From positions 186,001 through 250,000 of IMG/VR virus record IMGVR_UViG_3300042540_001399: a stretch of 64,000 bases of DNA; one strand, given 5' to 3'. Positions 33,670 to 56,351 of the stretch are shown here, one piece after another (position 1 is the first letter of the stretch; every line of letters begins with the position of its first letter). Under the pieces are notes generated by a model. That model ran no database searches. It saw nothing but the letters and a program-made list of their open reading frames with translations, and was not told the origin of the DNA. A program made the position numbers and the translations under genes.

Positions 33670-33687
33670 ATTAAAAAAAAAATAATT

Positions 33688-34281: not shown

Positions 34282-35339
34282 TATCAATAATAGTCACCGC
34301 ATATAATAATAAAAATTACATTCATGAATGTTTACAAAGCATTATAGAATCTTGTGGTGATGTAGATTTTGAAATTTTGTTGGGTATTGATAATTGTACA
34401 TCAACTTTGAAATCCGTGTTTCAAAAACACAAAAAATACAAAAATTTAAAAATACTCTTTTTCAAAAATAGAGTCGGAACTTACATTATAAGAAATAGTC
34501 TTGTGCCAATTTCAAAGTATGATAATATTTTATTTTTTGATTCTGATGACATCATGAAAAAAAATATGATTAATGATTTATTGTATAATATAAAAAAATA
34601 TGACTGTGTTAAACCTATGTTTTCTGGATTTAAAGATGGAGATGATATTACTTTACCCAAATTTAACACACAAAAAAACACATTTGGTGAAGGGGTATTT
34701 GCAATAAAGAAAAATGTTTTTAACGAAATGAACGGGTTTGAGCCATGGGTCTGTGCGGCAGATTCAGAGTTCAATTGGAGGTTGAGAATGAACAACAAAA
34801 CTTTTAAATACATAGAAAGGGTTTGTTTTTATTATAGAAGACATTCTACAAGTTTAACAACAAATCAAGAAACTGGAATGAGATCTAAATTGAGAATGAA
34901 ATATCATATTTTAACTAAAAACAAAAAAAATACTAAATCATTCTCACCATTGGATGAGATGGTTGTTTCGAAATTCATAGAAATAACTAACCATAATATT
35001 GATAATTTTTTAATAGACCAATTAAACCCTTCATTTGAAATACCTGAAGATAAAGGTCCCTTAGATGTTAACAATAATGAAAATGTAATTTCATTGATTT
35101 TTAATAAAACACCCAAGAAAGTTGTAGAACCAAATAAAAAACCAAAAGTTCAAATAGTTTCTAATAATCCAATAAATAATATATTAGTTAGAAAACCGAA
35201 AGTTGTTGATAAAGATAAAATCACTAAACAAAGACAAAATATTATTAACATAAAACAAAAAACTAATAGAGAAGTTTTTAACGAAATACACCCATCAAAA
35301 CCAAACCGAAGATTGGATCTTCCAAATATTAGGTTATAA
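34278..35339 (+). CDS. glycosyltransferase family 2 with basic C-terminal tail
   Basis: SIIVTAYN, GTYIIRN, FFDSDD, AADSEF. Confidence 0.85.
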   Translation: MISIIVTAYNNKNYIHECLQSIIESCGDVDFEILLGIDNCTSTLKSVFQKHKKYKNLKILFFKNRVGTYIIRNSLVPISKYDNILFFDSDDIMKKNMINDLLYNIKKYDCVKPMFSGFKDGDDITLPKFNTQKNTFGEGVFAIKKNVFNEMNGFEPWVCAADSEFNWRLRMNNKTFKYIERVCFYYRRHSTSLTTNQETGMRSKLRMKYHILTKNKKNTKSFSPLDEMVVSKFIEITNHNIDNFLIDQLNPSFEIPEDKGPLDVNNNENVISLIFNKTPKKVVEPNKKPKVQIVSNNPINNILVRKPKVVDKDKITKQRQNIINIKQKTNREVFNEIHPSKPNRRLDLPNIRL

Positions 35340-35381
35340 ATTTACATTTTGATTTTTATTTTTTATTTTTAAAATAAAAAA

Positions 35382-35561
35382 ATGTACGTTATAATCAAAC
35401 ATGTTAAAATGTCCGATAATAAAAAAAGGATACCTGTGATAATTCTTGATAGCCAAAATGAAATTTGGGAGTTTGAAGATTATGAAGAAGCTAAAAAAAT
35501 GAAAGATATTTTTGAAACTAATTCTGATTCTGGTCACATATATGAAGTAAAAAAAATATAA
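35382..35561 (+). CDS. small hypothetical protein (59 aa, not in ORF track)
   Basis: translated by hand: MYVIIKHVKM...IWEFEDYEEA...YEVKKI. Confidence 0.6.
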   Translation: MYVIIKHVKMSDNKKRIPVIILDSQNEIWEFEDYEEAKKMKDIFETNSDSGHIYEVKKI

Positions 35562-35562
35562 A

Positions 35563-35679
35563 ATGGAAGATATTCTATATGAAATACATAATGAATTTGT
35601 AAATTCTGAAGATTTTGACAAAATGTTATATGAAATGTTAATTTATTCAGAAAAGTATTGTCAATTAAAAAAAGATTAG
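35563..35679 (+). CDS. small hypothetical protein (38 aa)
   Basis: MEDILYEIHNEF...; 1 nt after upstream stop. Confidence 0.5.
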   Translation: MEDILYEIHNEFVNSEDFDKMLYEMLIYSEKYCQLKKD

Positions 35680-35687
35680 TATATTTG
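35680..35687 (+). promoter_or_regulatory. Bacteroidota sigma-A -7 promoter element upstream of leader 1
   Basis: TATATTTG with TTG at 35658-35660. Confidence 0.7.
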
Positions 35688-35732
35688 TAAAGGAATTAGA
35701 ACTTTTTAAAAAAACTGTATAATTATAATAAA

Positions 35733-35840
35733 ATGAAAAATACACTCAGACATATGGTCATTTGTAACAAGCCGAGCAATCAGTGGTCGTTTAGCTATAT
35801 TACGCGTAATCAGTCAAGGGTATTTTCACTTATGAGTTAA
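35733..35840 (+). CDS. attenuator leader peptide 1 (35 aa)
   Basis: MKNTLRHMVICNKPSNQWSFSYITRNQSRVFSLMS; codons match tRNA array 1. Confidence 0.85.
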   Translation: MKNTLRHMVICNKPSNQWSFSYITRNQSRVFSLMS

Positions 35841-35871
35841 AAACGTTTAACTAACATAATAGAAGGAATGT

Positions 35872-35908
35872 AAAACCCGAGACTTAAAAATCTCGGGTTT
35901 TTTGTTTT
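35872..35908 (+). terminator. attenuator terminator 1
   Basis: AAAACCCGAGA/TCTCGGGTTTT stem plus T tract ending 6 nt before tRNA-Thr. Confidence 0.9.
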
Positions 35909-35914
35909 ATATTA

Positions 35915-35986
35915 GCTCTGTAAGCATTGTTGGAGATGCGCCTGACTTGTAATCAGGAGAAATCAGTTCGATTCTGGTACGGAGCT
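35915..35986 (+). tRNA. tRNA-Thr(TGT)
   Basis: GCTCTGT/ACGGAGC; CCTGA-CTTGTAA-TCAGG; TTCGA. Confidence 0.9.
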
Positions 35987-35993
35987 CAAAAAG

Positions 35994-36002
35994 GTTCTTT
36001 GA
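35994..36002 (+). promoter_or_regulatory. boxA-like antitermination motif
   Basis: GTTCTTTGA; also at 39507, 39981 and 53468, all in RNA-gene leaders. Confidence 0.55.
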
Positions 36003-36019
36003 CATATTGGTCTTTATAG

Positions 36020-36090
36020 TGTTCCCTCGTCTAATGGCAGGACACGCGGTTTTGGTCCGTGGAATTGGGGTTCGAGTCCCTGGGGAACAA
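36020..36090 (+). tRNA. tRNA-Gln(TTG)
   Basis: TGTTCCC/GGGAACA; CGCGG-TTTTGGT-CCGTG. Confidence 0.92.
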
Positions 36091-36096
36091 CAATAA

Positions 36097-36180
36097 GGAA
36101 GAGTAATCACAACGGCTTGTGACTCCGTCTTGAAAACGGCAGGTACTGAAAGGTATGGGGATCGACACCTCACTCTTCCT
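36097..36180 (+). tRNA. tRNA-Ser(TGA)
   Basis: GGAAGAG/CTCTTCC; loop CTTGAAA; long variable arm; T loop ATCGACA. Confidence 0.88.
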
Positions 36181-36189
36181 CAACAATAA

Positions 36190-36262
36190 CTAGGTGTAGC
36201 TCAGATGGTAGAGCGGGTGGTTTGGGACCATCAGGCCGCAGGTTCGATCCCTGTCACTTAGA
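36190..36262 (+). tRNA. tRNA-Pro(TGG)
   Basis: CTAGGTG/CACTTAG; GGTGG-TTTGGGA-CCATC. Confidence 0.93.
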
Positions 36263-36266
36263 CAAC

Positions 36267-36342
36267 GTCTTCGTAGCTCAGTTGGTTTTAGAGCACCTCA
36301 CTTTTAATGAGGGGGTCACAGGTTCGAGCCCTGTCGGGGACA
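36267..36342 (+). tRNA. tRNA-Lys(TTT)
   Basis: GTCTTCG/CGGGGAC; CCTCA-CTTTTAA-TGAGG. Confidence 0.95.
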
Positions 36343-36384
36343 CAAAAATTTAGTAAAACTGAGCGATTTATACCAAAAAATGGT

Positions 36385-36392
36385 TATATTTG
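36385..36392 (+). promoter_or_regulatory. internal Bacteroidota -7 promoter element
   Basis: TATATTTG 17 nt before tRNA-Val. Confidence 0.6.
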
Positions 36393-36409
36393 CGTAAATA
36401 AACTAAAAA

Positions 36410-36483
36410 ACACTCTTAGCTCAGATGGTAGTAGCGGTTGTCTTACATACAACAGGTCACAGGTTCGATCCCTGTAGGGTGTA
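36410..36483 (+). tRNA. tRNA-Val(TAC)
   Basis: ACACTCT/AGGGTGT; GTTGT-CTTACAT-ACAAC. Confidence 0.92.
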
Positions 36484-36489
36484 CAATAA

Positions 36490-36575
36490 GGGAGAGTTGA
36501 GCAATTGGTTGGCTCAGCAGACTGTAAATCTGTCGTCGTAAGACCTTGGGGGTTCGAGTCCCTCCTCTCCCACCA
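36490..36575 (+). tRNA. tRNA-Tyr(GTA)
   Basis: GGGAGAG/CTCTCCC-A-CCA; loop CTGTAAA; variable arm. Confidence 0.95.
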
Positions 36576-36581
36576 CAAAAA

Positions 36582-36654
36582 GGACAAGTAGCTCAATTGG
36601 TAGAGCACCGCACTGTTAATGCGGGGGTTACAGGATCGTACCCTGTCTTGTCCG
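36582..36654 (+). tRNA. tRNA-Asn(GTT)
   Basis: GGACAAG/CTTGTCC; loop CTGTTAA; T loop ATCGTAC. Confidence 0.92.
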
Positions 36655-36660
36655 CAATAA

Positions 36661-36733
36661 GTTCACGTAGCTCAATTGGTAGAGCGCCGATCTGATACGT
36701 CGGAGGTAATGGGATCGTAACCCGTCGTGAACA
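36661..36733 (+). tRNA. tRNA-Ile(GAT)
   Basis: GTTCACG/CGTGAAC; loop CTGATAC; T loop ATCGTAA. Confidence 0.92.
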
Positions 36734-36737
36734 CTAC

Positions 36738-36821
36738 GGAAGATAAACCTTGATGGCGATAGGGTCCGCCTGCTAAGCGAGATGTACCTTTGGGTATTTG
36801 GTTCGATTCCAATGTCTTCCG
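36738..36821 (+). tRNA. tRNA-Ser(GCT)
   Basis: GGAAGA/TCTTCC; loop CTGCTAA; variable arm. Confidence 0.88.
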
Positions 36822-36827
36822 CAAAAC

Positions 36828-36897
36828 GCCGATAGGAAAGGTTTCCGATCCGGGCTCATATCCTGGATGTCATTGGGTTCGATACCCTTTATCGGTA
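36828..36897 (+). tRNA. atypical tRNA(CAT), probable elongator Met with shrunken D arm
   Basis: GCCGATA/TATCGGT; CCGGG-CTCATAT-CCTGG; D region only GGAA-AGGT-TTCC. Confidence 0.7.
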
Positions 36898-36903
36898 CTA
36901 CAT

Positions 36904-36977
36904 GGTGTATGTAGCTCAGTTGGCAGAGTGCTTGATTGTGGTTCAAGAGGTCATGGGTTCGACCCCCATCATACACA
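36904..36977 (+). tRNA. tRNA-His(GTG)
   Basis: encoded G-1, GTGTATG/CATACAC; loop TTGTGGT. Confidence 0.93.
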
Positions 36978-36978
36978 C

Positions 36979-37075
36979 AAATAGTTCACAACGGACAAGG
37001 CTTAGGCTCAAAGTGTGAGGTTATAATTCCTTATATTCCCTGAGGTGGGTGGCGAGTGGTTGACCAGAACTATTT
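36979..37075 (+). ncRNA. candidate structured RNA A
   Basis: 9-bp closing stem AAATAGTTC/GAACTATTT; no ORF. Confidence 0.45.
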
Positions 37076-37077
37076 AT

Positions 37078-37149
37078 ACCTTCGTAGCTTAATGGAAAAG
37101 CCTCAGAATACGAATCTGATGATTGGGAGTTCGACCCTCTCCGAAGGTA
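37078..37149 (+). tRNA. tRNA-Arg(ACG)
   Basis: ACCTTCG/CGAAGGT; TCAGA-ATACGAA-TCTGA. Confidence 0.92.
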
Positions 37150-37150
37150 C

Positions 37151-37283
37151 AAAAGATGATAGGAAGCGTAGAACAACGGACACGGAGGGGTGTTCGCAAG
37201 GGTACACACTAAGAATATATTTCTCTCTAAGGGTGTGTGAAGTCATACGATGGGATTCCTGATAAAGTTGTTCATCATCTTTT
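37151..37283 (+). ncRNA. candidate structured RNA B
   Basis: AAAAGATGAT/ATCATCTTTT and GAACAAC/GTTGTTC stems, internal hairpins. Confidence 0.55.
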
Positions 37284-37287
37284 ATTT

Positions 37288-37359
37288 ACCCCTTTCGTAT
37301 AATGGAAGTACAACACTCTTCTAAGGTGTCAGGTTGGAGTTCGAATCTCTGAGGGGGTA
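37288..37359 (+). tRNA. tRNA-Arg(TCT)
   Basis: ACCCCTT/AGGGGGT; ACACT-CTTCTAA-GGTGT. Confidence 0.9.
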
Positions 37360-37370
37360 CAACAAAATAC

Positions 37371-37441
37371 GCGTCTCTGGTGTAATGGTAGCATGATGGA
37401 TTCCAAACCCATCGGTCAGGGTTCGAGCCCTTGGGGACGCG
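37371..37441 (+). tRNA. tRNA-Trp(CCA)
   Basis: GCGTCTC/GGGACGC; ATGGA-TTCCAAA-CCCAT. Confidence 0.88.
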
Positions 37442-37449
37442 CTAATTAA

Positions 37450-37522
37450 GGACAGGTAGCTCAGTTGGTAGAGCGTTGGACTGAAGATCCAAGCGTCGGG
37501 GGTTCAATTCCCTCCCTGTCCA
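37450..37522 (+). tRNA. tRNA-Phe(GAA)
   Basis: GGACAGG/CCTGTCC; TTGGA-CTGAAGA-TCCAA. Confidence 0.95.
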
Positions 37523-37568
37523 CAAAATAAAATTTGTAATTTCTAACAAAAACCATTATCTTTGTATA

Positions 37569-38063
37569 ATGAAACATTTACCATACGAAGCTACAGGAAA
37601 GGCAATTAAGGGATATTCTGAATCAGAAACCGCTAGACGTGAAACAAATGACTGTGTGGTTAGAGCATTTGCATCGTCATTTGAAGTGTCTTATGATTAT
37701 GCCCATAAGTTTGTTGCGGATGAATTTGGTAGAAGACCAAGAAAAGGAACTTACGGAACTGTATCAAAACTTGTCAAAATGGCCGACAGTTTATTTAAAG
37801 TTAATGGTAAAAAAGTTTGTCCTGTTGGTATTAGACACAACGATAATATGTTAAGATCTTTGATGTATGATGTTAAAGTGAAAGGGGAAATTAAAAAAAG
37901 AAATATGACTGTTGGGACATTTGTTAAACAAAATCCAAAAGGAACTTTTTTTGTTTTGGTTAGACGACACGCATTTACAATCAAAGATGGTGTTGTAATT
38001 GGTAATTGGGATGACGCTATAAAAACAAAAAGACCAATGAGATGTGCCTTCAGAATTAAATAA
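37569..38063 (+). CDS. phage protein with NDCVVRA...HAF.I.DG motif (possible Cys-His-Asp peptidase fold)
   Basis: TATCTTTG -7 element at 37557-37564; Cys, His and Asp motif residues. Confidence 0.65.
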   Translation: MKHLPYEATGKAIKGYSESETARRETNDCVVRAFASSFEVSYDYAHKFVADEFGRRPRKGTYGTVSKLVKMADSLFKVNGKKVCPVGIRHNDNMLRSLMYDVKVKGEIKKRNMTVGTFVKQNPKGTFFVLVRRHAFTIKDGVVIGNWDDAIKTKRPMRCAFRIK

Positions 38064-38075
38064 AAAAATAAAAAA

Positions 38076-38531
38076 ATGAACCGTGTATTTAGAACGGTGG
38101 AAGGGGTTTCTATACCTGATATTGTAAAACATACTATTGATATTCTTAAAGAATGTCCATATGCTGAAATACACATTGGTACAGACTCACAAAACCATAG
38201 AAGATCAACCGTGTATGTTACGGCAATAGCATATAGATATGGTAACCGTGGGGTTCACTACATTTATCATAAACAAAAAATTAAAAAAATTCGTGATAAG
38301 TGGACAAGATTATGGAATGAAGCTGATTATTCGATCGAAGTTGCAAATTGGTTGACAAATAAAATAAAGGTTCAAGTTGAAATAGACCTTGATTACAATT
38401 ATCAAGAAAAGTACTTCAGTTCGAAGTTAGTTGGTCCAGCGGTTGGGTGGGTACAATCGTTAGGTTATAAGGCAAATATAAAACCAAATAATCAAATTGC
38501 AACAAGAGCGGCAGACCACCACTGTCGTTAA
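38076..38531 (+). CDS. RNase H-like YkuK family protein
   Basis: IGTDSQ, RLWNEA, DLDYN, IKP...AADH. Confidence 0.8.
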   Translation: MNRVFRTVEGVSIPDIVKHTIDILKECPYAEIHIGTDSQNHRRSTVYVTAIAYRYGNRGVHYIYHKQKIKKIRDKWTRLWNEADYSIEVANWLTNKIKVQVEIDLDYNYQEKYFSSKLVGPAVGWVQSLGYKANIKPNNQIATRAADHHCR

Positions 38532-38533
38532 TT

Positions 38534-38605
38534 GGTCGGGTGTCTGATGGGTAAAGTCTCGGTCTGCAAAACCGTAGTATGTGGGTTCGAATCCCACCCC
38601 GACCT
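38534..38605 (+). tRNA. tRNA-Cys(GCA)
   Basis: GGTCGGG/CCCGACC, U73; loop CTGCAAA. Confidence 0.9.
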
Positions 38606-38614
38606 CAACAAAAT

Positions 38615-38688
38615 GCCCCTATGGCGGAATTGGTATACGCGTGTGACTTAGGATCACAATCTTGCAGGTTCGAGTCCTGCTGGGGGTA
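38615..38688 (+). tRNA. tRNA-Leu(TAG), short variable loop
   Basis: GCCCCTA/TGGGGGT; TGTGA-CTTAGGA-TCACA; variable region ATCTT. Confidence 0.9.
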
Positions 38689-38727
38689 CAAATATTTTTA
38701 TTAGTATATTTATACTAAAAGATTATT

Positions 38728-39318
38728 ATGAAAAAGATTATAAGACTTACTGAATCAGATCTCGCTCGTATAGTTGGACGAGTTATTAAAGAAGAATATG
38801 ATGAAGATGATGAAGTGGAGGTTACACCTGAAATGATTATCAAAATGCTTATGGATAGTGCCGAATCAACCCCACAAGAAAATTATGATGACCTATATGA
38901 TTGGATGCAAGATGTATTTTCACCGGTTGAAAGTGAACTTGAGGATATGGGGTATGATATTGACGACCTTCGTATGACATATGATGATGTTATAATGAGT
39001 TTATGGGATGATAATGATGAAGATGATGAGGAATCATTATATGAATCAGATCTCGCTCGTATCGTTAAACAAGTTATTAGTGAATCTAAAAAGAATCTTA
39101 GTAAATCTGAAATATTGAAGATGTCAAAAGATGAGCTAAAAGATGTTTATGGTGAATTGGAAGTAAAAGGTGAGTATCACGGAAACAAAGGAACATTCCA
39201 CCACTTCAAAAGAACTGCAATCGGAGATATTGTCTGTAGTTTTAGAACTGATGACTCAACACCATCAGGATTGAAAAGAAATACTCAAGGAATTAAAGTC
39301 AAAAATTTAGATTTTTAA
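38728..39318 (+). CDS. protein with two LxESDL motifs
   Basis: MKKIIRLTESDLARIV and internal LYESDLARIV; ATATTTAT 38706-38713. Confidence 0.8.
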   Translation: MKKIIRLTESDLARIVGRVIKEEYDEDDEVEVTPEMIIKMLMDSAESTPQENYDDLYDWMQDVFSPVESELEDMGYDIDDLRMTYDDVIMSLWDDNDEDDEESLYESDLARIVKQVISESKKNLSKSEILKMSKDELKDVYGELEVKGEYHGNKGTFHHFKRTAIGDIVCSFRTDDSTPSGLKRNTQGIKVKNLDF

Positions 39319-39324
39319 TAAAAC

Positions 39325-39356
39325 TTGACACTTTTGAAATTATTAGTATATTTATA
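39325..39356 (+). promoter_or_regulatory. promoter upstream of leader 2
   Basis: TTGACA 39325-39330 and TATATTTATA 39347-39356. Confidence 0.6.
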
Positions 39357-39377
39357 AAACAAATTAAAAAACCGCAA

Positions 39378-39446
39378 ATGAAAAATTTACACATATTATT
39401 GATAGGGGGCGATTTAGCTGAAGCAACTTTCAAGAAGAGGGTGTAA
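39378..39446 (+). CDS. attenuator leader peptide 2 (22 aa)
   Basis: MKNLHILLIGGDLAEATFKKRV; codons match tRNA array 2. Confidence 0.85.
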   Translation: MKNLHILLIGGDLAEATFKKRV

Positions 39447-39469
39447 TATTTTATACATTTAATATTTAG

Positions 39470-39504
39470 AACCCCTCTTCCAAAAAAGAGGGGTTTTTTG
39501 TTTT
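39470..39504 (+). terminator. attenuator terminator 2
   Basis: AACCCCTCTT/AAGAGGGGTT plus T tract; boxA-like motif and tRNA-Leu follow. Confidence 0.9.
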
Positions 39505-39530
39505 AGGTTCTTTGAAATAATGGTAATAAT

Positions 39531-39615
39531 GGTTCGGTGGTGGAATTGGCAATACACGACAGGTTTAAGCCCTGTTTCCCATTGAGGATTGTGGGTTCGA
39601 GTCCCACCCGGACTA
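39531..39615 (+). tRNA. tRNA-Leu(TAA)
   Basis: GGTTCGG/CCGGACT; ACAGG-TTTAAGC-CCTGT; variable arm. Confidence 0.93.
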
Positions 39616-39620
39616 CAACA

Positions 39621-39716
39621 AAAACACATAAACTTTGGTTCCCACACAGCGGTGAGACGGGGTAAGTTATATACAATTTCTCGGGGCTGGAAGTAGAAAG
39701 CCAAAGAATGTGTTTT
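39621..39716 (+). ncRNA. candidate rod-like structured RNA C (6S-like?)
   Basis: AAAACACAT/ATGTGTTTT, CTTTGGTT/AGCCAAAG, CAGC/GCTG, GAGA/TCTC nested stems. Confidence 0.55.
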
Positions 39717-39777
39717 TTTAAAAAAAACTTTACAAAGTATTTGGTAGAACAAAATAAAAAATTTAATTTTGTAATAA

Positions 39778-39894
39778 ATGAAGACAATTGAAGTTACATA
39801 TCAAGAAATCAAAATGGCAACAAGGCCAAATGTGTATAAAAATAAAAAAAAATACACAAGAAAAGAAAAACATAAAAAAGATTTGGTAGATTAA
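39778..39894 (+). CDS. small basic protein, ArfA-like motif (38 aa)
   Basis: MKTIEVTYQEIKMATRPNVYKNKKKYTRKEKHKKDLVD; TAATTTTG at 39764-39771. Confidence 0.6.
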   Translation: MKTIEVTYQEIKMATRPNVYKNKKKYTRKEKHKKDLVD

Positions 39895-39905
39895 AAAAAA
39901 TCTTA

Positions 39906-39989
39906 TATCTTTGTTAAACAAATGACGGGGGTAGGAAAATTAGTGTTGTGGATTCCTACTCCCGTGTAAAAGGGAAGAAAGTTCTTTGA
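39906..39989 (+). promoter_or_regulatory. -7 promoter, 13-bp hairpin and boxA-like motif (rrn-leader-like)
   Basis: TATCTTTG 39906-39913; ACGGGGGTAGGAA/TTCCTACTCCCGT 39925-39965; GTTCTTTGA 39981-39989. Confidence 0.6.
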
Positions 39990-40000
39990 TTTAAAATATT

Positions 40001-40081
40001 GTGGTTGTAAGCAATGGGAAACTCGTTAAGTACATCAACCAGTTGGCTCAAGATGGTGAAACGAGAGTGTGAGTCAACTAC
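40001..40081 (+). ncRNA. candidate structured RNA D
   Basis: GTGGTTG/CAACTAC, CTCGTT/AACGAG, CATC/GATG nested stems. Confidence 0.45.
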
Positions 40082-40103
40082 TAAATCACAAAAAAAATGA
40101 AAT

Positions 40104-40228
40104 AGGCAAGTGGCGGAATTTATGGCAGACGCTTAGGTTGATTCCCCGTAAGAAGTCACCGAGATATAGCTGGGGATGTCTCTTGAAAAGGGAACTATAT
40201 CGTACAGGTTCGAATCCTGTTTTGCCTA
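40104..40228 (+). ncRNA. tRNA-like RNA with expanded anticodon/variable region and pseudoknot
   Basis: AGGCAAG/TTTGCCT acceptor, Leu-type D arm, ACAGG-TTCGAAT-CCTGT T arm, ~70-nt insert. Confidence 0.75.
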
Positions 40229-40233
40229 CACAT

Positions 40234-40306
40234 CGCGGGATGTGGAAGATGGTTATCCGCTCGGTCTCATAAGCCGAGATCGCCGGTTCGAGTCCGGCTC
40301 CCGCAA
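40234..40306 (+). tRNA. initiator tRNA-fMet(CAT)
   Basis: C1:A72 mismatch, CGCGGGA/TCCCGCA; loop CTCATAA. Confidence 0.9.
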
Positions 40307-40311
40307 CTTAA

Positions 40312-40371
40312 AGGGTGGATAGGTGGAAGGGCCTTTCCTGAAAGACGGTTTACTAGGCCCGTGTCCACCCT
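40312..40371 (+). ncRNA. candidate small structured RNA E
   Basis: AGGGTGGATA/TGTCCACCCT and GGGCCT/AGGCCC stems. Confidence 0.45.
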
Positions 40372-40382
40372 ACTGAATTTAT

Positions 40383-40463
40383 GCTGACGTACCAGTGGAT
40401 GCTTATATCATCTATACCTGTAGCGGTAAGTTGAAAACGTTGGTTCGAATCCAACCGTCAGTA
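40383..40463 (+). tRNA. D-armless tRNA-like RNA with TAT anticodon-like loop
   Basis: GCTGACG/CGTCAGT; GGATG-CTTATAT-CATCT; GTTGG-TTCGAAT-CCAAC; 7-nt D replacement. Confidence 0.6.
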
Positions 40464-40466
40464 CGG

Positions 40467-40610
40467 GAGTGTATGCAGTAGAGATCTGCTTATGATGGTA
40501 GGGACAAACACTTTAAAAAAGGGTCCCAAAGAGATAAGCCGTTTAGTAGTTTTGGTCGATAAAAACTAACGGATTTTATAGTAATGGTTCACCGATCGAA
40601 ACCAATACTC
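40467..40610 (+). ncRNA. candidate multibranched RNA F
   Basis: GAGTGT/ATACTC closing stem with four internal hairpins. Confidence 0.5.
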
Positions 40611-40681
40611 ATGATGTCAGAAAGGTTGATCACCTAATTCATGTAAACACCGTGACAACACCCCAAAGTTGTCACACTTTT

Positions 40682-40757
40682 GCGGGAGTAGCTCAATTGG
40701 TAGAGTTCCAGCCTTCCAAGCTGGCTGTTGAGGGTTCGAATCCCTTCTCCCGCTCCA
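40682..40757 (+). tRNA. tRNA-Gly(TCC)
   Basis: GCGGGAG/CTCCCGC-T-CCA; loop CTTCCAA. Confidence 0.95.
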
Positions 40758-40761
40758 AGTT

Positions 40762-40834
40762 GGGCCTGATGCCGACGGCAGGTCGAGTGGTTTGCAACCA
40801 CATCGTTTGGGTTCGATTCCCACAGTGTCCACCA
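40762..40834 (+). tRNA. atypical tRNA-Ala(TGC)
   Basis: G3:U70, A73, encoded CCA; GTGG-TTTGCAA-CCAC; bulged acceptor stem. Confidence 0.75.
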
Positions 40835-41007
40835 AATAAACAAAAAAACAAAGTAGTGATGAAGGAAGTTTTGTCAGGAACTTTAAAATCAAGAAAAGTT
40901 AATTTTGTTCAGATTGAAAATAACAGTGATTTTTTAAGTTCTTTAAGAAAAAAAATAAAAAAAAGAATAAGTAATTTAAAAAAAACAATTAAATTTGTAA
41001 AAAAAAG

Positions 41008-41087
41008 AAGATGAGTTTCCCTACATCCCGGATTAGTGAGAAACTTAAAGAGGGACAAAAGTGGTACACAAGTCCACGACTCATCTT
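41008..41087 (+). ncRNA. candidate structured RNA G
   Basis: AAGATGAGT/ACTCATCTT closing stem, two hairpins; TAAATTTG at 40990-40997. Confidence 0.45.
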
Positions 41088-41092
41088 AATTT

Positions 41093-41164
41093 GGTCGGTT
41101 CATCTAGGGGTCAGGATACAAGGTTTTCATCCTTGTCACACGGGTTCGAATCCCGTACCGACTA
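41093..41164 (+). tRNA. tRNA-Glu(TTC)
   Basis: GGTCGGT/ACCGACT; CAAGG-TTTTCAT-CCTTG. Confidence 0.93.
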
Positions 41165-41189
41165 CAAACCTGTCAAGGTAGTACAGGAA

Positions 41190-41305
41190 GGTCAGGAGTG
41201 TAATGAGGCACGGTGCCAAGTCCTAAAGACACCACGGTCCAAGAGCAATTTGGACGCGAGAAGTTATAAGGTTGCTCATTGTAGGTTCGAATCCTACCCT
41301 GACTT
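41190..41305 (+). ncRNA. tRNA-like RNA: acceptor plus T arm with novel 84-nt body
   Basis: GGTCAGG/CCTGACT; GTAGG-TTCGAAT-CCTAC; AATGAG/CTCATT and GTCCAA/TTGGAC stems. Confidence 0.7.
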
Positions 41306-41307
41306 CA

Positions 41308-41455
41308 CGGTTCGGATCATCACCGAATAGTATGCCCAATACGATGAGAAATGAGGTGATACCTCATATGGGACTTCTGATAGATAAAGGATCTATTCGG
41401 TTTGACTAACCGCGGGAAATATCAAAGAGGGTTGAAGAACTACGTACCCTCGAGT
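41308..41455 (+). ncRNA. candidate multi-hairpin RNA H
   Basis: CCGAATAG/CTATTCGG, ATGAGG/CCTCAT, CGGTT/AACCG, GAGGG/CCCTC. Confidence 0.4.
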
Positions 41456-41461
41456 CCAATT

Positions 41462-41536
41462 GGTCCATTGGTGTAGTGGCTAACATTCATCCCTGTCACG
41501 GATGAGCCGCGAGTTCGATTCTCGCATGGACCGCCA
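41462..41536 (+). tRNA. tRNA-Asp(GTC)
   Basis: GGTCCAT/ATGGACC-G-CCA; CATCC-CTGTCAC-GGATG. Confidence 0.95.
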
Positions 41537-41558
41537 AACTTATTAAAAATTAACCATT

Positions 41559-41828
41559 ATGAAAACTTTTCAAGACTTGGAATTTATAAAAATAAATGAT
41601 GCACCGTTTATGGTTGGTAAAAAATCCCGTATGCATTTTGATAATGGGTTCGGTGTATCTGTTGTATCACACTCTTATTCATATGGGGGTCGTGATGGTC
41701 TTTATGAAGTCGCGGTCCTTGACTCTGACGACAATCTTACCTACGATACTCCAATAACCAATGATGTAATGGGTTACTTAACTGAACAAGATGTTACTAA
41801 TGTCATGAAACAAGTTCAAGAGCTATAA
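41559..41828 (+). CDS. hypothetical phage protein
   Basis: 89 aa; FDNGFGVSVV...GGRDGLYEVAVL. Confidence 0.75.
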   Translation: MKTFQDLEFIKINDAPFMVGKKSRMHFDNGFGVSVVSHSYSYGGRDGLYEVAVLDSDDNLTYDTPITNDVMGYLTEQDVTNVMKQVQEL

Positions 41829-41913
41829 AAGATGACAGTTTTTTTATTCATAACATTTTTAACGACACTTTTTTTGTTGAGAAAAAAAAGAAAGTTTTAA
41901 GTAGATAAAAAAA

Positions 41914-41987
41914 GGTCTCTTAGCTCATTAGGTTAGAGCAACTGACTCATAATCAGTAGGTGGTTGGTTCGATCCCAACAGGGACCA
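41914..41987 (+). tRNA. tRNA(CAT), Ile2 (lysidine)-type
   Basis: GGTCTCT/AGGGACC; GACTCATAATC anticodon arm as in bacterial tRNA-Ile2 (recalled, not searched). Confidence 0.8.
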
Positions 41988-42032
41988 CAAAAGTATTGAA
42001 TATTTTAAAACAGAAATTATTATTTATAATAT

Positions 42033-42106
42033 GCACCCGTAGCTCAGCTGGATAGAGCAACTGCCTTCTAAGCAGTAGGTCAATGGTTCGAATCCATTCG
42101 GGTGTA
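42033..42106 (+). tRNA. tRNA-Arg(TCT), second copy
   Basis: GCACCCG/CGGGTGT; ACTGC-CTTCTAA-GCAGT. Confidence 0.95.
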
Positions 42107-42178
42107 CTTTTTTTTTATTTTTTTTTTGGAAATCAAAAAGTTTCCTGTATCTTTGTTGAAATAAATAACGATAAAGAT

Positions 42179-42928
42179 ATGACAACAGACATCACAGCAC
42201 AGGTAAAAAATTACAACGGTAAAAATTCATTCATTTTGAAAATGAAAGACGCAATTAGTAAATATGGATCACTTACTGTGAACCAAAAATCTGCAGTAGA
42301 AAAAATTTTTAAGAATGTTGATGAAGTAAAGTCAGTTGAAATGACTGAAGATCTTAAGAAAATTGCATCCTATGACGGGCCAAATTCTTTTGTTTTGGAT
42401 ATTAAAAATAAACTTACTCAATATGGTAAACTTTCTGAAAAACAAATTTCGGCTGGTTTGAAGCAAATCGACAAAGAACAAAACAAAACTGTTGTTCGTA
42501 AAGTTAATGTACCAGCAATTGGTGATACTATCAAAGTTGGTAGAAAAATTGGTCAACAACTTAAAGAAAAATACGGTCTTAATTTTAACCCAATTTTGTT
42601 GGACATCACAAAAGTTTTATCGTTTTCTGCTAAAGCTGTAAAATTTTCAGGTAAAATGACCGTAAAACGTGGTGACGTTTGTGTGTGTTGTGCAAAAACT
42701 CTTACCGATGAGTTTTCAATGTTAACTAAAATGGGTAAGACATGTGCGAAACACATGGGTGTTGAGTACATCACAGACGCAAGTGAGGCGGATAAATTCC
42801 GTGAAGAGTACCTACGTCGTGTTGAAGAAATTGGTGAAATGGAATTTTGGGTTCCAAATTCCCAAATTAAATCTTGGGAAGGAGACACTAATGTTCTTCA
42901 AAAAATGTCACACCTTTGGTTCAAATAA
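42179..42928 (+). CDS. protein with two N-terminal repeats and a Zn-finger (DUF6011-like)
   Basis: YNGKNSF...YGSLT..Q repeated; CVCCAKTLTD..S...MGKTCA. Confidence 0.7.
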   Translation: MTTDITAQVKNYNGKNSFILKMKDAISKYGSLTVNQKSAVEKIFKNVDEVKSVEMTEDLKKIASYDGPNSFVLDIKNKLTQYGKLSEKQISAGLKQIDKEQNKTVVRKVNVPAIGDTIKVGRKIGQQLKEKYGLNFNPILLDITKVLSFSAKAVKFSGKMTVKRGDVCVCCAKTLTDEFSMLTKMGKTCAKHMGVEYITDASEADKFREEYLRRVEEIGEMEFWVPNSQIKSWEGDTNVLQKMSHLWFK

Positions 42929-43023
42929 AAAAAAAGTGGGGTTTGTTCATCAATAGAACGGCCCCACTCATTTTGTATTTTTTTGTTAAAATTTTTTATT
43001 ATTTATATTATAAACATCATCAC

Positions 43024-43113
43024 ATGGACAACTCAATCATAGCGGCAATATTAACACCAATAGTTCTATTTGGTATTTTTCTTTATTTCTACTTTACAGA
43101 TAAAGAATACTAA
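43024..43113 (+). CDS. small membrane peptide (29 aa)
   Basis: MDNSIIAAILTPIVLFGIFLYFYFTDKEY after TATTTAT. Confidence 0.5.
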   Translation: MDNSIIAAILTPIVLFGIFLYFYFTDKEY

Positions 43114-43117
43114 AGTT

Positions 43118-43726
43118 TTATTTTATATCGGTAGACTCTAAAAGTGTGTAAGAAAATTTGTTACCATGGATTTTTGCCGCTTTTTTACATATTGACATAA
43201 ATTCATCAAAATCTTTAACTCTTTTAAATACCTGACATCCTTCGGACCAATTTTCAACCCAAGTCGAGTCCTGACCGGCTTTGTGTATGTTAATACCAAA
43301 CATTCCTGTGTCTGTTTTAGTTTCTTCAAAAATTAAATCTTTATTAGAATCTCTCCAAACTGTTACATTACCTAATCTTTGGCAAAGAGCGTCGTATTTC
43401 CCTTGATGTTTATCAATTTTCCAAACACCTCGATACTGGCCGGGTACTAATCTTGCAACGCCATTTTTGTTGTGAAATTCCATGACCCCTTTTTTACCAG
43501 GATCACATGTTGCCATCCAACAATGAAATTTCCAACTGCCTGTTTCGTCTTTATAAGTTATCGTTAGACAATCATCAAAAACATTTGTGACTTTGTCAGC
43601 AACACTTGGTTCATTATTTCTAACACCAACAATATTTACATCATAACCTTTGTTAGATGCGTCGTCAAACCATTTAAAATTTTTTGATTTGACAGTAGTT
43701 TCTATTTGTTCTTTTGTATAACACAT
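43118..43726 (-). CDS. YkuD/L,D-transpeptidase-like cell-wall enzyme
   Basis: GINIH...NWSEGCQVF His/Cys motif. Confidence 0.65.
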   Translation of the reverse strand: MCYTKEQIETTVKSKNFKWFDDASNKGYDVNIVGVRNNEPSVADKVTNVFDDCLTITYKDETGSWKFHCWMATCDPGKKGVMEFHNKNGVARLVPGQYRGVWKIDKHQGKYDALCQRLGNVTVWRDSNKDLIFEETKTDTGMFGINIHKAGQDSTWVENWSEGCQVFKRVKDFDEFMSICKKAAKIHGNKFSYTLLESTDIK

Positions 43727-43791
43727 AATATATTTTTTTTTATAAATATAAAGTTTTTCAAAAAGTAAATAGTTTGATAATATTTATTAAT

Positions 43792-53408: not shown

Positions 53409-53476
53409 TTGACAGATACAAATAAATGTAGTAACTTTGTAAAACAAATCAGGAAAAGACCTGAAACGTTCTTTGA
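53409..53476 (+). promoter_or_regulatory. Bacteroidota-type promoter plus boxA-like motif
   Basis: TTGACA 53409-53414, TAACTTTG 53432-53439, GTTCTTTGA 53468-53476. Confidence 0.7.
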
Positions 53477-53479
53477 AAA

Positions 53480-54376: not shown

Positions 54377-54410
54377 TTTTATTTTAATGGAGCCACCGGT
54401 AAAGAACATT

Positions 54411-56329: not shown

Positions 56330-56351
56330 ATATTTTCAATGAACTTTTAAT

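What the first reader, a model, noticed from the sequence alone, without database searches (positions are those of the whole stretch)
35915..42106. A complete minimal tRNA set split into two separately regulated arrays
Seen: 26 tRNAs cover all 20 amino acids. There is one U34 tRNA per four-codon box (Arg-ACG for CGN), G34 or U34 for split boxes, fMet, an Ile2-type CAT and two Arg-TCT. Leu and Ile isoacceptors are split between arrays exactly as the leader codons are. Inference: the phage can replace the whole host tRNA pool, and the array is organised as a regulated unit rather than a passive collection. Caveat: internal -7 promoter-like elements at 36385, 37557, 39764, 39906 and 40990 could bypass attenuation for parts of each array.
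Basis: partly seen in the sequence, partly recalled or inferred. Interest (0 to 1): 0.8.

Follow-up and report, generated by a model that had tools for sequence, protein, structure and literature searches.

The report
Codon-sensing switches controlling phage tRNA arrays
A 291-kb freshwater phage carries a near-complete set of tRNA genes in two blocks, and each block sits behind a tiny gene whose codons match the tRNAs that follow it plus an RNA on/off hairpin, an arrangement that probably lets the phage make tRNAs only when translation runs short of them and that I could not find described before.

Summary
The observation largely holds. ARAGORN defaults and the Rfam threshold tRNAs. They are conserved in 13-23 distinct relatives, with compensatory base-pair changes.

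The two arrays are separately controlled units. Each has a promoter, a conserved short ORF (35 and 22 codons), the only two intrinsic terminators in 7 kb, and a motif also found in Bacteroidota 16S rRNA leaders.

- **Leader 1:** it samples all 18 tRNA species of unit 1 and uses no other codon (0 of 3 million null windows).
- **Leader 2:** its core holds 12 codons read only by unit-2 tRNAs.
- **Antiterminator:** in both leaders the last codons pair with the 5' arm of the terminator.

A motif scan of viral contigs found the same module in 41 unrelated leader families. Leader composition tracks the downstream tRNAs (z 6.5-9.7). The ORF end pairs with its own terminator arm (z -13).

The best reading is ribosome-mediated attenuation that gives feedback control of phage tRNA supply. 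It rests on comparative evidence only, and conserved internal promoter-like motifs may bypass it. Eight literature searches found no prior description.

The parts
35658..35687 (+). Promoter of unit 1 (TTG, 19 nt, TATATTTG; Bacteroidota type)
   Evidence: Pattern match. Conserved in 28 of 29 distinct relatives.
35733..35840 (+). Leader ORF 1: 35 codons plus stop, peptide MKNTLRHMVICNKPSNQWSFSYITRNQSRVFSLMS
   Evidence: ORF list. Kept as a 34-36-codon ORF in 30 distinct variants. Covers 18 of 18 unit-1 tRNA species with no other codon.
35813..35821 (+). Antiterminator strand of leader 1 (GTCAAGGGT, codons 27-30). It pairs with ACCC..GAC of the terminator 5' arm.
   Evidence: Fold of the truncated transcript. 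Covaries with the arm among relatives. Weak in the window type, strong (-18 to -21 kcal/mol) in the L009 subtype.
35872..35908 (+). Intrinsic terminator 1 (CCCGAGA / TCTCGGG plus U run), 7 nt before tRNA-Thr
   Evidence: Terminator scan. Present in all relatives.
35915..37523 (+). Array 1: Thr-TGT, Gln-TTG, Ser-TGA, Pro-TGG, Lys-TTT, Val-TAC, Tyr-GTA, Asn-GTT, Ile-GAT, Ser-GCT, CAT, His-GTG, Arg-ACG, Arg-TCT, Trp-CCA, Phe-GAA
   Evidence: Same order in relatives.
35993..36011 (+). boxA-like element 1 (GGTTCTTTGACATATTGGT), between tRNA-Thr and tRNA-Gln
   Evidence: The same motif lies in 16S rRNA leaders of two Bacteroidota genomes.
36097..36184 (+). Non-canonical tRNA-Ser(UGA): 6-bp D stem with a 4-nt loop; T loop reads ATCGACA
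   Evidence: ARAGORN relaxed. 23 distinct homologues, 13 pairs with compensatory changes.
36738..36822 (+). Non-canonical tRNA-Ser(GCU)
   Evidence: Rfam tRNA-Sec model 31 bits, below threshold. 20 homologues, 7 compensatory pairs.
36827..36898 (+). Non-canonical tRNA(CAU) with a 4-nt D loop, probably elongator Met
   Evidence: 14 homologues, 6 compensatory pairs.
37569..38531 (+). Two ORFs inside unit 1 (phrog_3754; PF04308 RNase H-like/DUF458), preceded by promoter-like TATCTTTG at 37557
   Evidence: Always lie between tRNA-Phe and tRNA-Cys in relatives.
38534..38689 (+). tRNA-Cys(GCA) and tRNA-Leu(UAG), the last members of unit 1
   Evidence: Leader 1 carries TGT and CTC/CTT codons.
39325..39354 (+). 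Promoter of unit 2 (TTGACA, 16 nt, TATATT)
   Evidence: 11 of 12 matches. Conserved in 36 distinct homologues.
39378..39446 (+). Leader ORF 2: 22 codons plus stop, peptide MKNLHILLIGGDLAEATFKKRV
   Evidence: 23 distinct variants all keep TTR-Leu, ATA-Ile, Gly, Ala, Glu and Asp codons.
39434..39441 (+). Antiterminator strand of leader 2 (GAAGAGGG, codons 19-22). It pairs with CCCTCTTC at 39473-39480.
   Evidence: Duplex energy -14.8 kcal/mol against -12.7 for the terminator. Kept in 30 of 30 relatives with compensatory changes.
39468..39505 (+). Intrinsic terminator 2 (CCCCTCTTC / GAGGGG plus U run)
39506..39524 (+). boxA-like element 2 (GGTTCTTTGAAATAATGGT), between terminator 2 and tRNA-Leu(UAA)
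39531..42107 (+). Array 2: Leu-TAA, initiator-like CAT (40234), Ile-UAU-like (40383), Gly-TCC, Ala-TGC (40762), Glu-TTC, Asp-GTC, ORF 41559-41828, CAT (41914), Arg-TCT. Structured spacer RNAs and two tRNA-like elements lie between them.
40383..40464 (+). Ile-UAU-like gene without a D arm (anticodon loop CTTATAT)
   Evidence: 18 distinct homologues, 5 compensatory pairs. A canonical tRNA-Ile(UAU) lies at the same place in L042 and L046.
40762..40834 (+). Non-canonical tRNA-Ala(UGC) with a 3-nt D loop; G3:U70 and A73 in the standard register
   Evidence: 13 homologues, 4 compensatory pairs. G3:U70 read from the sequence.
39764..39913 (+). Two internal promoter-like motifs (TAATTTTG at 39764, TATCTTTG at 39906) that could bypass attenuator 2. 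Others lie at 36385, 37557 and 40990.
   Evidence: Conserved in 35 of 35 and 79 of 81 homologous stretches.

Best explanation
Each tRNA block is an operon under ribosome-mediated (leader-peptide) transcription attenuation, and the leader acts as a codon sampler.

Proposed sequence of events:
1. Transcription starts at a promoter and runs into a short ORF. The codons of this ORF call, mostly once or twice each, for the tRNA species encoded downstream.
2. If those codons are read quickly, the ribosome reaches the end of the ORF and covers its last codons.
3. Those codons would otherwise pair with the 5' arm of the terminator. With them covered, the terminator hairpin forms and transcription stops just before the first tRNA.
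4. If any sampled tRNA is scarce, the ribosome lags. Scarcity could come from a codon-usage mismatch with the host, or from host tRNAs being degraded or cleaved.
5. The antiterminator then forms, and RNA polymerase reads through.
6. The polymerase transcribes an rrn-type boxA-like element that probably recruits Nus factors, then the untranslated array.

The result is negative feedback on the phage's own decoding capacity, run separately for two sets of tRNAs.

Shown: the sequence architecture, its conservation, the codon/tRNA correspondence and the alternative pairings. Inferred: that the leaders are translated, that stalling drives read-through, that boxA acts through Nus factors, and how much of the flux passes the attenuators as against the internal promoters.
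For: 1. Architecture. The only two intrinsic terminators in 35300-42400 lie between a promoter-proximal short ORF and the first tRNA. That leaves 7 nt (unit 1) and 25 nt (unit 2) of spacer, too little for another promoter.
2. Codon match in the window. Leader 1 covers 18 of 18 unit-1 tRNA species and uses no codon outside them. In 35-codon windows of the phage's own CDS, P(18/18) = 3.4e-5 and P(no outside codon) = 2e-4. Both together occurred 0 times in 3e6 windows. Leader 2 covers 8 of 8 unit-2 species, and 12 of codons 4-16 are read only by unit-2 tRNAs (joint P about 1e-3).
3. Synonymous-codon partition in the clade. Leader 1 has Leu CTN 55 against TTR 2, and Ile ATH 52 against ATA 1. Leader 2 has Leu TTR 81 against CTN 1, and Ile ATA 41 against ATH 13. 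The genome uses TTR for 65% of its Leu codons.
4. Conservation of the codon set. 30 distinct leader-1 variants, some only about 40% identical, keep 16-18 of the 18 species and always all 16 amino acids. Nearly all outside codons lie at codons 27-31, in or next to the antiterminator segment. Variable sites show no third-position excess. What is conserved is the codon set and the frame, not the peptide.
5. Antiterminator. For leader 2 it is -11.5 to -15 kcal/mol against -9.5 to -12.7 for the terminator in 30 of 30 relatives, with compensatory changes. For leader 1 the pairing covaries with the arm.
6. Generality. 41 leader families share under 50% identity. Array amino acids covered by the family's own leader: 0.92, against 0.73 when partners are permuted (z 6.5). 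Leader residues with a cognate tRNA downstream: 0.48 against 0.345 (z 9.7). No permutation in 1e5 reached either value. The ORF end pairs with its own terminator arm at -13.9 against -8.7 kcal/mol (z -13.2, 35 distinct arms).
7. Within one genome. Own pairing scores at or above swapped pairing in 15 of 16 comparisons across 4 genomes; the exception is leader-2 specificity in the window (0.62 own, 0.71 swapped), which the amino-acid-level score blurs because it pools Leu and Ile isoacceptors. In L060, tRNA-Thr and tRNA-Leu(UAG) sit in the second array, and leader 2 there has three Thr codons and two CTT.
8. boxA-like motif. It occurs 4 times in the window against 0.23 expected, each time upstream of or within a non-coding RNA unit. 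It also occurs in two Bacteroidota 16S leaders.
Against: - There is no experimental evidence. The metatranscriptome material is only assembled contigs. One contig ends in the terminator-1 U run, and others span the array spacers, but none discriminates between models.
- The leader-1 antiterminator of the window type is weak: -5 to -9 kcal/mol as a duplex, in two short helices.
- I found no anti-antiterminator (1:2) or pause hairpin. An untranslated leader would therefore read through by default.
- Conserved promoter-like motifs lie inside both arrays. In some relatives one lies between terminator 2 and boxA. Much expression could bypass the switch.
- Relatives that have lost many tRNAs (L003, L030) keep a full leader. 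Arg isoacceptor codons in leader 1 do not follow the presence of the matching Arg tRNA genes.
- Across families the isoacceptor-level association is weak (odds ratio 2.45, P 0.034).
- Eight of the 22 codons in leader 2 call for unit-1 tRNAs.
Confidence: 0.72

Rival explanations
1. The short ORFs are independent micro-genes, or their mRNAs are small RNAs, each ended by its own terminator. The tRNAs are transcribed from other promoters, and the match in composition has no regulatory meaning.
For: Conserved TAnnTTTG motifs lie inside the arrays. In L010, L022, L025, L028, L039, L054 and L060 one lies between terminator 2 and the boxA-like element. One RNA contig ends at terminator 1.
Against: tRNA-Thr starts 7 nt after the terminator-1 U run in the window, and about 20 nt after it in all relatives. 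There is no room for a promoter. In most of the 70 modules the first tRNA starts 27-60 nt after the terminator. A micro-protein would not be expected to lose sequence conservation at all codon positions while keeping a codon set equal to the downstream tRNA set. It would also not be expected to pair with its own terminator arm in 34 of 39 families.
Confidence: 0.1
2. The terminators are leaky or constitutive punctuation. Expression of most tRNAs is dominated by internal promoters, so the arrays are in effect unregulated, or regulated only by promoter timing.
For: Five internal promoter-like motifs are conserved in 64-100% of homologous stretches. Only tRNA-Leu(UAA) and one spacer RNA lie between attenuator 2 and the motif at 39764. 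A weak antiterminator in leader 1 would make that switch shallow.
Against: This does not explain why the leader codons mirror the whole downstream unit. For leader 2 that includes Gly, Ala, Glu and Asp tRNAs beyond 39906. It also does not explain why the mirror shifts when tRNAs move between arrays.
Confidence: 0.1
3. The leader region is a non-translated RNA sensor, such as a T-box-like element that binds tRNA directly, and the open frame is incidental.
For: Variable sites show no third-position excess. The region is structured.
Against: No T-box or other riboswitch match even at E up to 10. The frame, the ATG and a length of 34-36 (or 22-24) codons are kept through indels in a 31% GC genome, where a random 35-codon frame stays open about 6% of the time (my estimate from base composition). 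One RNA cannot plausibly bind 18 different tRNAs, whereas a ribosome reads them in turn. The synonymous-codon partition makes sense only if the codons are decoded.
Confidence: 0.06

Closest known systems
Ribosome-mediated transcription attenuators of amino-acid operons (trpL, hisL, leuL, pheL; multivalent thrL and ilvL) and of pheST (pheM); recalled from my own knowledge
   Same: A promoter-proximal leader ORF, and an intrinsic terminator before the regulated genes. A mutually exclusive antiterminator has its 5' strand occluded by a ribosome that finishes the ORF. The regulatory codons are cognate to the regulated product.
   Different: - The regulated genes are tRNA genes, not enzymes.
- The leader carries one or two codons for each of up to 18 tRNA species, not tandem runs of one or a few.
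- The sensed quantity would be the tRNA itself as much as its charging.
- No 1:2 anti-antiterminator was found.
- A boxA-like element follows the terminator.
- The elements are in phages of Bacteroidota-type promoter usage.
T-box riboswitches
   Same: A terminator/antiterminator decision upstream of translation-related genes, in response to tRNA status.
   Different: T-boxes bind one uncharged tRNA directly, through a specifier codon and the T-box sequence, without translation. No T-box match exists here, and the signal is spread over an ORF.
Phage tRNA gene clusters (T4, T5, KVP40, mycobacteriophages, 'huge phages') and the bS21-encoding freshwater jumbo phages of Chen et al. 2022 (PMC9723584)
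   Same: Large phages with 5-25 or more tRNAs. This genome (291 kb, 31% GC, bS21 gene) fits the described clade.
   Different: That paper counts tRNAs but reports no leaders, attenuators or boxA. As far as I recall, the published explanations for phage tRNAs are codon usage, host tRNA degradation and evasion of anticodon nucleases. None involves feedback control of the tRNA genes.
rrn-type boxA / Nus-factor processive antitermination
   Same: The motif GTTC(T/A)TTGA lies between the promoter and a long untranslated RNA. Near-identical motifs lie in 16S rRNA leaders of Bacteroidota.
   Different: Here it sits downstream of a conditional terminator and in phage units (tRNA arrays, GOLLD, tmRNA). 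Binding of NusB/NusE is not tested.

Membership tests
tRNA gene (Rfam RF00005 / ARAGORN) | Score at or above the Rfam gathering threshold and ARAGORN defaults: the 22 canonical genes | tested here: met
   22 genes score 46.5-72.8 bits against a threshold of 29. ARAGORN defaults call the same 22.
tRNA gene (Rfam RF00005 / ARAGORN) | The same thresholds applied to Ser-TGA 36097, Ser-GCT 36738, CAT 36827 and Ala-TGC 40762 | tested here: not met
   Absent at defaults and at the gathering score. Found only with ARAGORN -ps80. Ser-GCT scores 31 bits against the tRNA-Sec model, below its threshold.
tRNA gene (Rfam RF00005 / ARAGORN) | Cloverleaf helices kept by compensatory substitutions, and an invariant anticodon loop in orthologues (the four non-canonical genes) | tested here: met
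   13, 7, 6 and 4 pairs with changes on both sides, in 23, 20, 14 and 13 distinct homologues.
tRNA gene (Rfam RF00005 / ARAGORN) | Processing, modification and aminoacylation | not testable with these tools
   Needs tRNA-seq and charging assays in infected cells.
Leader-peptide transcription attenuator | A short ORF just downstream of a promoter and upstream of the regulated genes | tested here: met
   ORFs 35733-35840 and 39378-39446 lie behind promoters at 35658 and 39325. Conserved in relatives.
Leader-peptide transcription attenuator | An intrinsic terminator between the leader ORF and the regulated genes | tested here: met
   These are the only two terminators in 7.1 kb, at 35872-35901 and 39468-39497.
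Leader-peptide transcription attenuator | An antiterminator helix that excludes the terminator, with its 5' strand in the ribosome-covered end of the ORF | tested here: met
   Leader 2: 30 of 30 relatives. Leader 1. Across 39 families: z -13.2 against permuted partners, with the strand ending -2 to 17 nt before the stop in 37 of 39 families (23 and 35 nt in the two others).
Leader-peptide transcription attenuator | Regulatory codons cognate to the regulated product | tested here: met
   The codons occur singly for many species, not in runs.
Leader-peptide transcription attenuator | An anti-antiterminator (1:2) or pause hairpin that synchronises the ribosome and the polymerase | tested here: inconclusive
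   Hairpins are predicted in the 5' part of leader 1, and one overlaps the stop codon (35835-35852). None competes with the antiterminator strand, and none was seen in leader 2.
Leader-peptide transcription attenuator | Read-through depends on translation of the leader and on tRNA supply | not testable with these tools
   Only assembled metatranscriptome contigs were available.
T-box riboswitch | Match to the T-box covariance model (specifier loop, T-box sequence) | tested here: not met
   No T-box hit in 34500-43500 at E up to 10.
rrn-type boxA antitermination element | A conserved motif between the promoter and an untranslated RNA, shared with rRNA operon leaders of the host phylum | tested here: met
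   Four sites in the window against 0.23 expected, all upstream of or within non-coding RNA units. GTTCTTTGA and GTTCATTGACATGTTGG lie 160-210 nt before the 16S start in two Bacteroidota genomes.
rrn-type boxA antitermination element | NusB/NusE binding and Rho resistance | not testable with these tools
   Biochemical.
bS21-encoding freshwater jumbo phages (PMC9723584) | About 290-330 kb, 31-34% GC, 5-25 tRNAs and a bS21 gene | tested here: met
   290,887 bp, 31.1% GC, 22 tRNAs at defaults. PF01165 match at 27.7 bits, over the cut-off. Description in the paper.

The most novel reading that the evidence does not exclude
A widespread and so far undescribed class of phage regulatory elements: 'codon-sampler' leader peptides. 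Each samples the tRNA species encoded in the array behind it and sets read-through of an attenuator. This gives the phage closed-loop, set-by-set control of its own decoding capacity. It would also act as a built-in sensor of host tRNA depletion, or of cleavage by anticodon-nuclease defences. After the conditional terminator, the phage borrows the host's rrn boxA antitermination signal to complete the untranslated operon.
Probability: 0.65. Interest if true: 0.92.

Novelty: new variant of a known kind. Interest (0 to 1): 0.88.

Why it matters
Why phages carry tRNAs is an open question. The candidate answers are codon usage, host tRNA degradation and escape from tRNA-cleaving defences. How the tRNA genes are controlled is essentially unknown.

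If these leaders work as proposed, phage tRNA supply is under feedback, not constitutive. The signal would be the speed at which a ribosome reads one codon for each tRNA. That makes the open question testable, because the leader sequence states which tRNAs the phage monitors.

It would also extend classical attenuation from amino-acid metabolism to the decoding machinery itself. It would give a compact natural design for sensing many tRNAs at once. Finally, it would supply dozens of independent families for comparative and synthetic work.

The non-canonical but conserved tRNAs (short D loops, and a D-arm-less Ile-UAU) and the conserved structured spacer RNAs add further testable material.

Tried and rejected
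- **Megablast against deposited phages.** The 12-kb region matched only single tRNAs, and no relatives were found there.
- **Column-wise pair counting on the MAFFT alignment of leader 2.** I abandoned this because the two terminator classes are shifted by one column. I used per-sequence duplex energies and permutations instead.
- **Metatranscriptome runs.** Only assembled contigs were available, most of them cross-hits from other organisms' tRNAs. They could not separate terminated from read-through RNA.
- **Scan of 185,579 species genomes with the 19-nt boxA-like motif.** It gave 21 hits, at least 15 of them in Bacteroidota. The contexts were a start codon on the other strand (topA-like in the one locus I translated), a repeat element, and similar. 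This did not confirm the motif as an rrn leader. Direct inspection of 16S leaders did.
- **Module pattern in 401 Bacteroidota genomes.** Six hits against eight for the reversed control, and none followed by tRNAs. It is not a chromosomal feature in this sample.
- **Isoacceptor-level association across families.** The direction is right but the effect is weak (P 0.034).
- **Coding signature by codon position.** There is no third-position excess. I read this as selection on the codon set and not on the peptide, but it gives no independent proof of translation.
- **Correlation of the missing Arg isoacceptor codon in leader 1 with loss of the matching tRNA.** None was found.
- **Assigning the CAT genes at 36827 and 41914 to Met or Ile2.** Not possible with these tools.
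- **A first simulation script** timed out and was rewritten.

Full report
**What the sequence is.** The window is bases 186001-250000 of a single 290,887-bp contig with 31.1% G+C. IMG/VR holds a 100% identical record. The genome has a bS21 gene. Its size, composition and tRNA count fit the bS21-encoding freshwater jumbo phages of Chen et al. 2022, who counted tRNAs but did not discuss their control (PMC9723584). Promoter-like sites are of the Bacteroidota type, TTG then about 19 nt then TAnnTTTG. Deposited phage genomes contain no close relative. IMG/VR contains dozens.

**Check of the observation.**
- ARAGORN defaults and Rfam at its gathering score agree on 22 tRNAs, all on the + strand between 35915 and 42107. 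They cover 18 amino acids, without Ser or Ala.
- A relaxed ARAGORN run adds Ser-TGA (36097-36184), Ser-GCT (36738-36822), a CAT gene (36827-36898) and Ala-TGC (40762-40834).
- The four have unusual D arms: a 6-bp stem with a 4-nt loop, a 4-nt loop, and a 3-nt loop.
- They are not decaying copies. In 13-23 distinct relatives each keeps its cloverleaf through 4-13 base pairs changed on both sides, and its anticodon loop does not vary.
- The CAT gene at 40234 has a mismatch at positions 1:72 in 8 of 8 distinct orthologues, in four different combinations. This is the hallmark of a bacterial initiator tRNA.
It lacks a D arm here and in 17 other distinct homologues. It is a canonical 75-nt tRNA-Ile(UAU) at the same position in L042 and L046.
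- Formally the set reads every sense codon except CGG, which is used 0.8 times per 1000 codons. This requires the seven U34 tRNAs to read NNY codons, which make up 16% of all codons.

**The two units.** Only two intrinsic terminators are found in 35300-42400. Both lie in front of an array, not behind one.

Unit 1 consists of:
- a promoter at 35658-35687;
- a 35-codon ORF at 35733-35840;
- a terminator at 35872-35908;
- tRNA-Thr at 35915, only 7 nt further on;
- 16 tRNAs in all, then two ORFs, then tRNA-Cys and tRNA-Leu(UAG).

Unit 2 consists of:
- a promoter at 39325-39354;
- a 22-codon ORF at 39378-39446;
- a terminator at 39468-39505;
- a 19-nt motif;
- tRNA-Leu(UAA) at 39531, and the rest of the array to 42107.

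The promoters, ORFs and terminators are conserved in about 30 distinct relatives. In every relative with the interval complete, the tRNAs between leader 1 and leader 2 are a subset of the same 18 species. The one exception is a doubtful Ala-CGC call in L018.

**Leader codons mirror the arrays.**
- The 35 codons of leader 1 call for all 18 tRNA species of unit 1 and for nothing else. There are no Ala, Asp, Glu or Gly codons, and no TTR or ATA.
- I compared this with 35-codon windows drawn from the phage's own long ORFs. Full coverage has P = 3.4e-5. Absence of outside codons has P = 2e-4. Both together occurred 0 times in 3 million windows.
- Leader 2 covers all eight unit-2 species. Twelve of its codons 4-16 are readable only by unit-2 tRNAs (joint P about 1e-3).
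- The split holds among synonymous codons, which peptide function cannot explain. Over the clade, leader 1 uses CTN 55 times and TTR twice. Leader 2 uses TTR 81 times and CTN once. The genome prefers TTR (65% of Leu codons). The Ile codons ATH and ATA split the same way.
- Thirty distinct leader-1 variants, some about 40% identical to the window's, all keep the same 16 amino acids and 16-18 of the 18 species. Nearly all outside codons fall at codons 27-31.
- Variable sites are spread evenly over the three codon positions. The peptide sequence is therefore free to change, while the frame, the length and the codon set are held.

**Alternative RNA structures.**
- In leader 2 the last codons, GAAGAGGG at 39434-39441, are complementary to CCCTCTTC in the 5' arm of the terminator. 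The duplex energy is -14.8 kcal/mol, against -12.7 for the terminator hairpin.
- All 30 distinct relatives keep such a pairing, at -11.5 to -15 kcal/mol. The ORF end changes together with the arm: AGAGGG with CCCTCT, AGATGG with CCATCT, and AAGATGG with CCATCTT.
- In leader 1 the segment GTCAAGGGT (35813-35821) pairs with ACCC..GAC of the terminator arm in the minimum-energy fold of the truncated transcript.
- This pairing is weak in the window type and strong (-18 to -21 kcal/mol) in the L009/L034/L054/L082 subtype. It follows the arm sequence among relatives.
- Both antiterminator strands lie where a ribosome finishing the ORF would cover them. The codons that match the arrays lie upstream of them. 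This is the logic of classical attenuation.

**Generality.**
- The distant relative L060 has a different tRNA order and the same modules. There, tRNA-Thr and tRNA-Leu(UAG) lie in the second array. Its leader 2 carries three Thr codons and two CTT. Its antiterminator (GGGTGGGT with ACCCACCC) has an unrelated sequence.
- A scan of viral contigs for a terminator end followed by the 9-nt motif returned more than 120 loci.
- In 70 unique modules a 15-45-codon ORF ends shortly before the terminator. At least two tRNAs follow it, the first within 300 nt and usually within 27-60 nt. These modules fall into 41 leader families with less than 50% identity.
- The leaders follow their arrays. A leader rich in Pro, Gln and His precedes Pro, His and Gln tRNAs (L223). 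A Leu-rich leader precedes four Leu tRNAs (L224). A leader with YYYEE precedes Glu and Tyr tRNAs (L214).
- In a permutation test over the 41 families, the family's own leader covers 92% of the array's amino acids, against 73% for permuted partners (z 6.5). In addition, 48% of leader residues have a cognate tRNA downstream, against 34.5% (z 9.7). No permutation in 100,000 reached either observed value.
- The ORF end pairs with its own terminator arm at -13.9 kcal/mol on average, against -8.7 with permuted partners (z -13.2). This covers 39 families with 35 distinct arms. In 27 of the 39, the duplex is at least as stable as the terminator hairpin.
- Four genomes carry two modules each. Own pairing scores at or above swapped pairing in 15 of the 16 comparisons. 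The exception is leader-2 specificity in the window, where the amino-acid-level score pools Leu and Ile isoacceptors.
- The module pattern is not enriched in 401 sampled Bacteroidota genomes: 6 hits against 8 for a reversed control, and none followed by tRNAs.

**The motif after the terminator.** GTTC(T/A)TTGA(A/C)A occurs four times in the window against 0.23 expected:
- after tRNA-Thr (35993);
- after terminator 2 (39506);
- between a promoter and the GOLLD RNA (53468);
- just before the tmRNA (56331-56344, minus strand).

Near-identical motifs lie between the promoter and the 16S rRNA gene in two Bacteroidota genomes. From my own knowledge of rrn leaders, I read it as a boxA-type element. 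It would recruit Nus factors and protect long untranslated transcripts. This was not tested here.

**Mechanism and its limits.** I commit to ribosome-mediated attenuation with a codon-sampling leader. Fast decoding of the leader leads to termination. Slow decoding of any sampled codon leads to read-through and synthesis of that whole set of tRNAs.

The sequence features and their covariation are shown. Translation of the leaders, the effect of stalling, and the role of Nus factors are inferred.

The main reservations are these:
- There is no transcript-level evidence. Only assembled metatranscriptome contigs were available. One of them ends in the terminator-1 U run.
- The leader-1 antiterminator is weak in this phage.
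- I found no anti-antiterminator.
- Promoter-like motifs inside the arrays are conserved: 39764 in 35 of 35 homologous stretches, 39906 in 79 of 81, 37557 in 7 of 7, 40990 in 5 of 5, and 36385 in 9 of 14. In some relatives another lies between terminator 2 and the motif.
- Relatives with reduced arrays keep complete leaders.
- The isoacceptor-level association across families is weak.

**Comparison with what is known, and novelty.** The elements work like the trp, his, thr, ilv and pheM attenuators. They meet four of that family's defining sequence features; a fifth (the anti-antiterminator or pause hairpin) was inconclusive, and dependence on translation could not be tested. They differ in what they regulate (tRNA genes), in leader design (single codons for many tRNAs), and in the boxA element that follows. 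They are not T-boxes. Eight full-text searches found no description of leader peptides or attenuators in front of tRNA genes. The searchable library is incomplete, so earlier work cannot be excluded. I rate this as a new variant of a known kind of mechanism, of high interest.

Noticed in passing
window 53967-54377 (+), with 53432-53481: GOLLD RNA (Rfam 320 bits). It is preceded by a promoter-like TAACTTTG and by the same boxA-like motif as the tRNA arrays. The structured region probably starts earlier, near 53480.
   Followed up: partly
window 55939-56329 (-), with 56331-56375: Phage-encoded tmRNA (Rfam 114 bits; ARAGORN did not call it). It has its own promoter-like site and a boxA-like motif directly upstream.
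   Followed up: partly
window 36982-37075, 37153-37285, 39618-39705, 39918-40100, 40310-40381, 40466-40680, 41003-41091, 41308-41460: The spacers between tRNAs hold G+C-richer, strongly folding RNAs that match no Rfam family. Six of them are conserved in 5-19 relatives with 5-14 compensatory pairs. A homologue of 41003-41091 also precedes a tRNA in the distant locus L060 (7582-7665).
   Followed up: partly
window 40104-40229 and 41190-41306: Two tRNA-like elements with a normal acceptor stem and T arm but insertions of 40-50 nt (Rfam tRNA 27.2 and 21.5 bits, below threshold). The second is conserved in 15 distinct relatives and has a long central helix. Its function is unknown.
   Followed up: partly
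window 36097-36184, 36827-36898, 40383-40464, 40762-40834: Several conserved phage tRNAs have truncated or missing D loops. The Ile-UAU gene has a canonical counterpart in some relatives. This could bear on escape from host tRNA-targeting defences or on different processing. Not tested.
   Followed up: partly
window 37569-38063 and 38076-38531: Two protein genes sit inside tRNA unit 1 in all relatives: phrog_3754 (unknown function) and an RNase H-like protein (PF04308/DUF458). A role in tRNA or RNA processing is conceivable.
   Followed up: partly
window 43774-45549 (+): A 591-aa ORF with GAF, PAS and histidine-kinase ATPase domains. This is a sensor kinase encoded by a phage.
   Followed up: no
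window 38703-38716 and 39341-39354: The repeated sequence TTAGTATATTTATA, with a final A in place of the usual G of TAnnTTTG, is conserved in relatives. With TTGACA 16 nt upstream, the leader-2 promoter fits the sigma-70 consensus (11 of 12) better than the Bacteroidota one. It may be a distinct promoter class.
   Followed up: partly
window 39778-39894 (+): A small Lys-rich ORF (38 aa) behind the conserved promoter-like motif at 39764, inside array 2.
   Followed up: no
window 32917-35339 (+): Two family-2 glycosyltransferases and a methyltransferase lie directly upstream of the tRNA region.
   Followed up: no
L090 1061-1129 and 4319-4386; L086, L092, L098, L104: In several Bacteroidales genomes the 19-nt motif lies on the strand opposite a short ORF that starts MSKNLF. 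In L090 it lies next to DUF805 RNA motifs. This looks like a different small-ORF leader system in the hosts.
   Followed up: no
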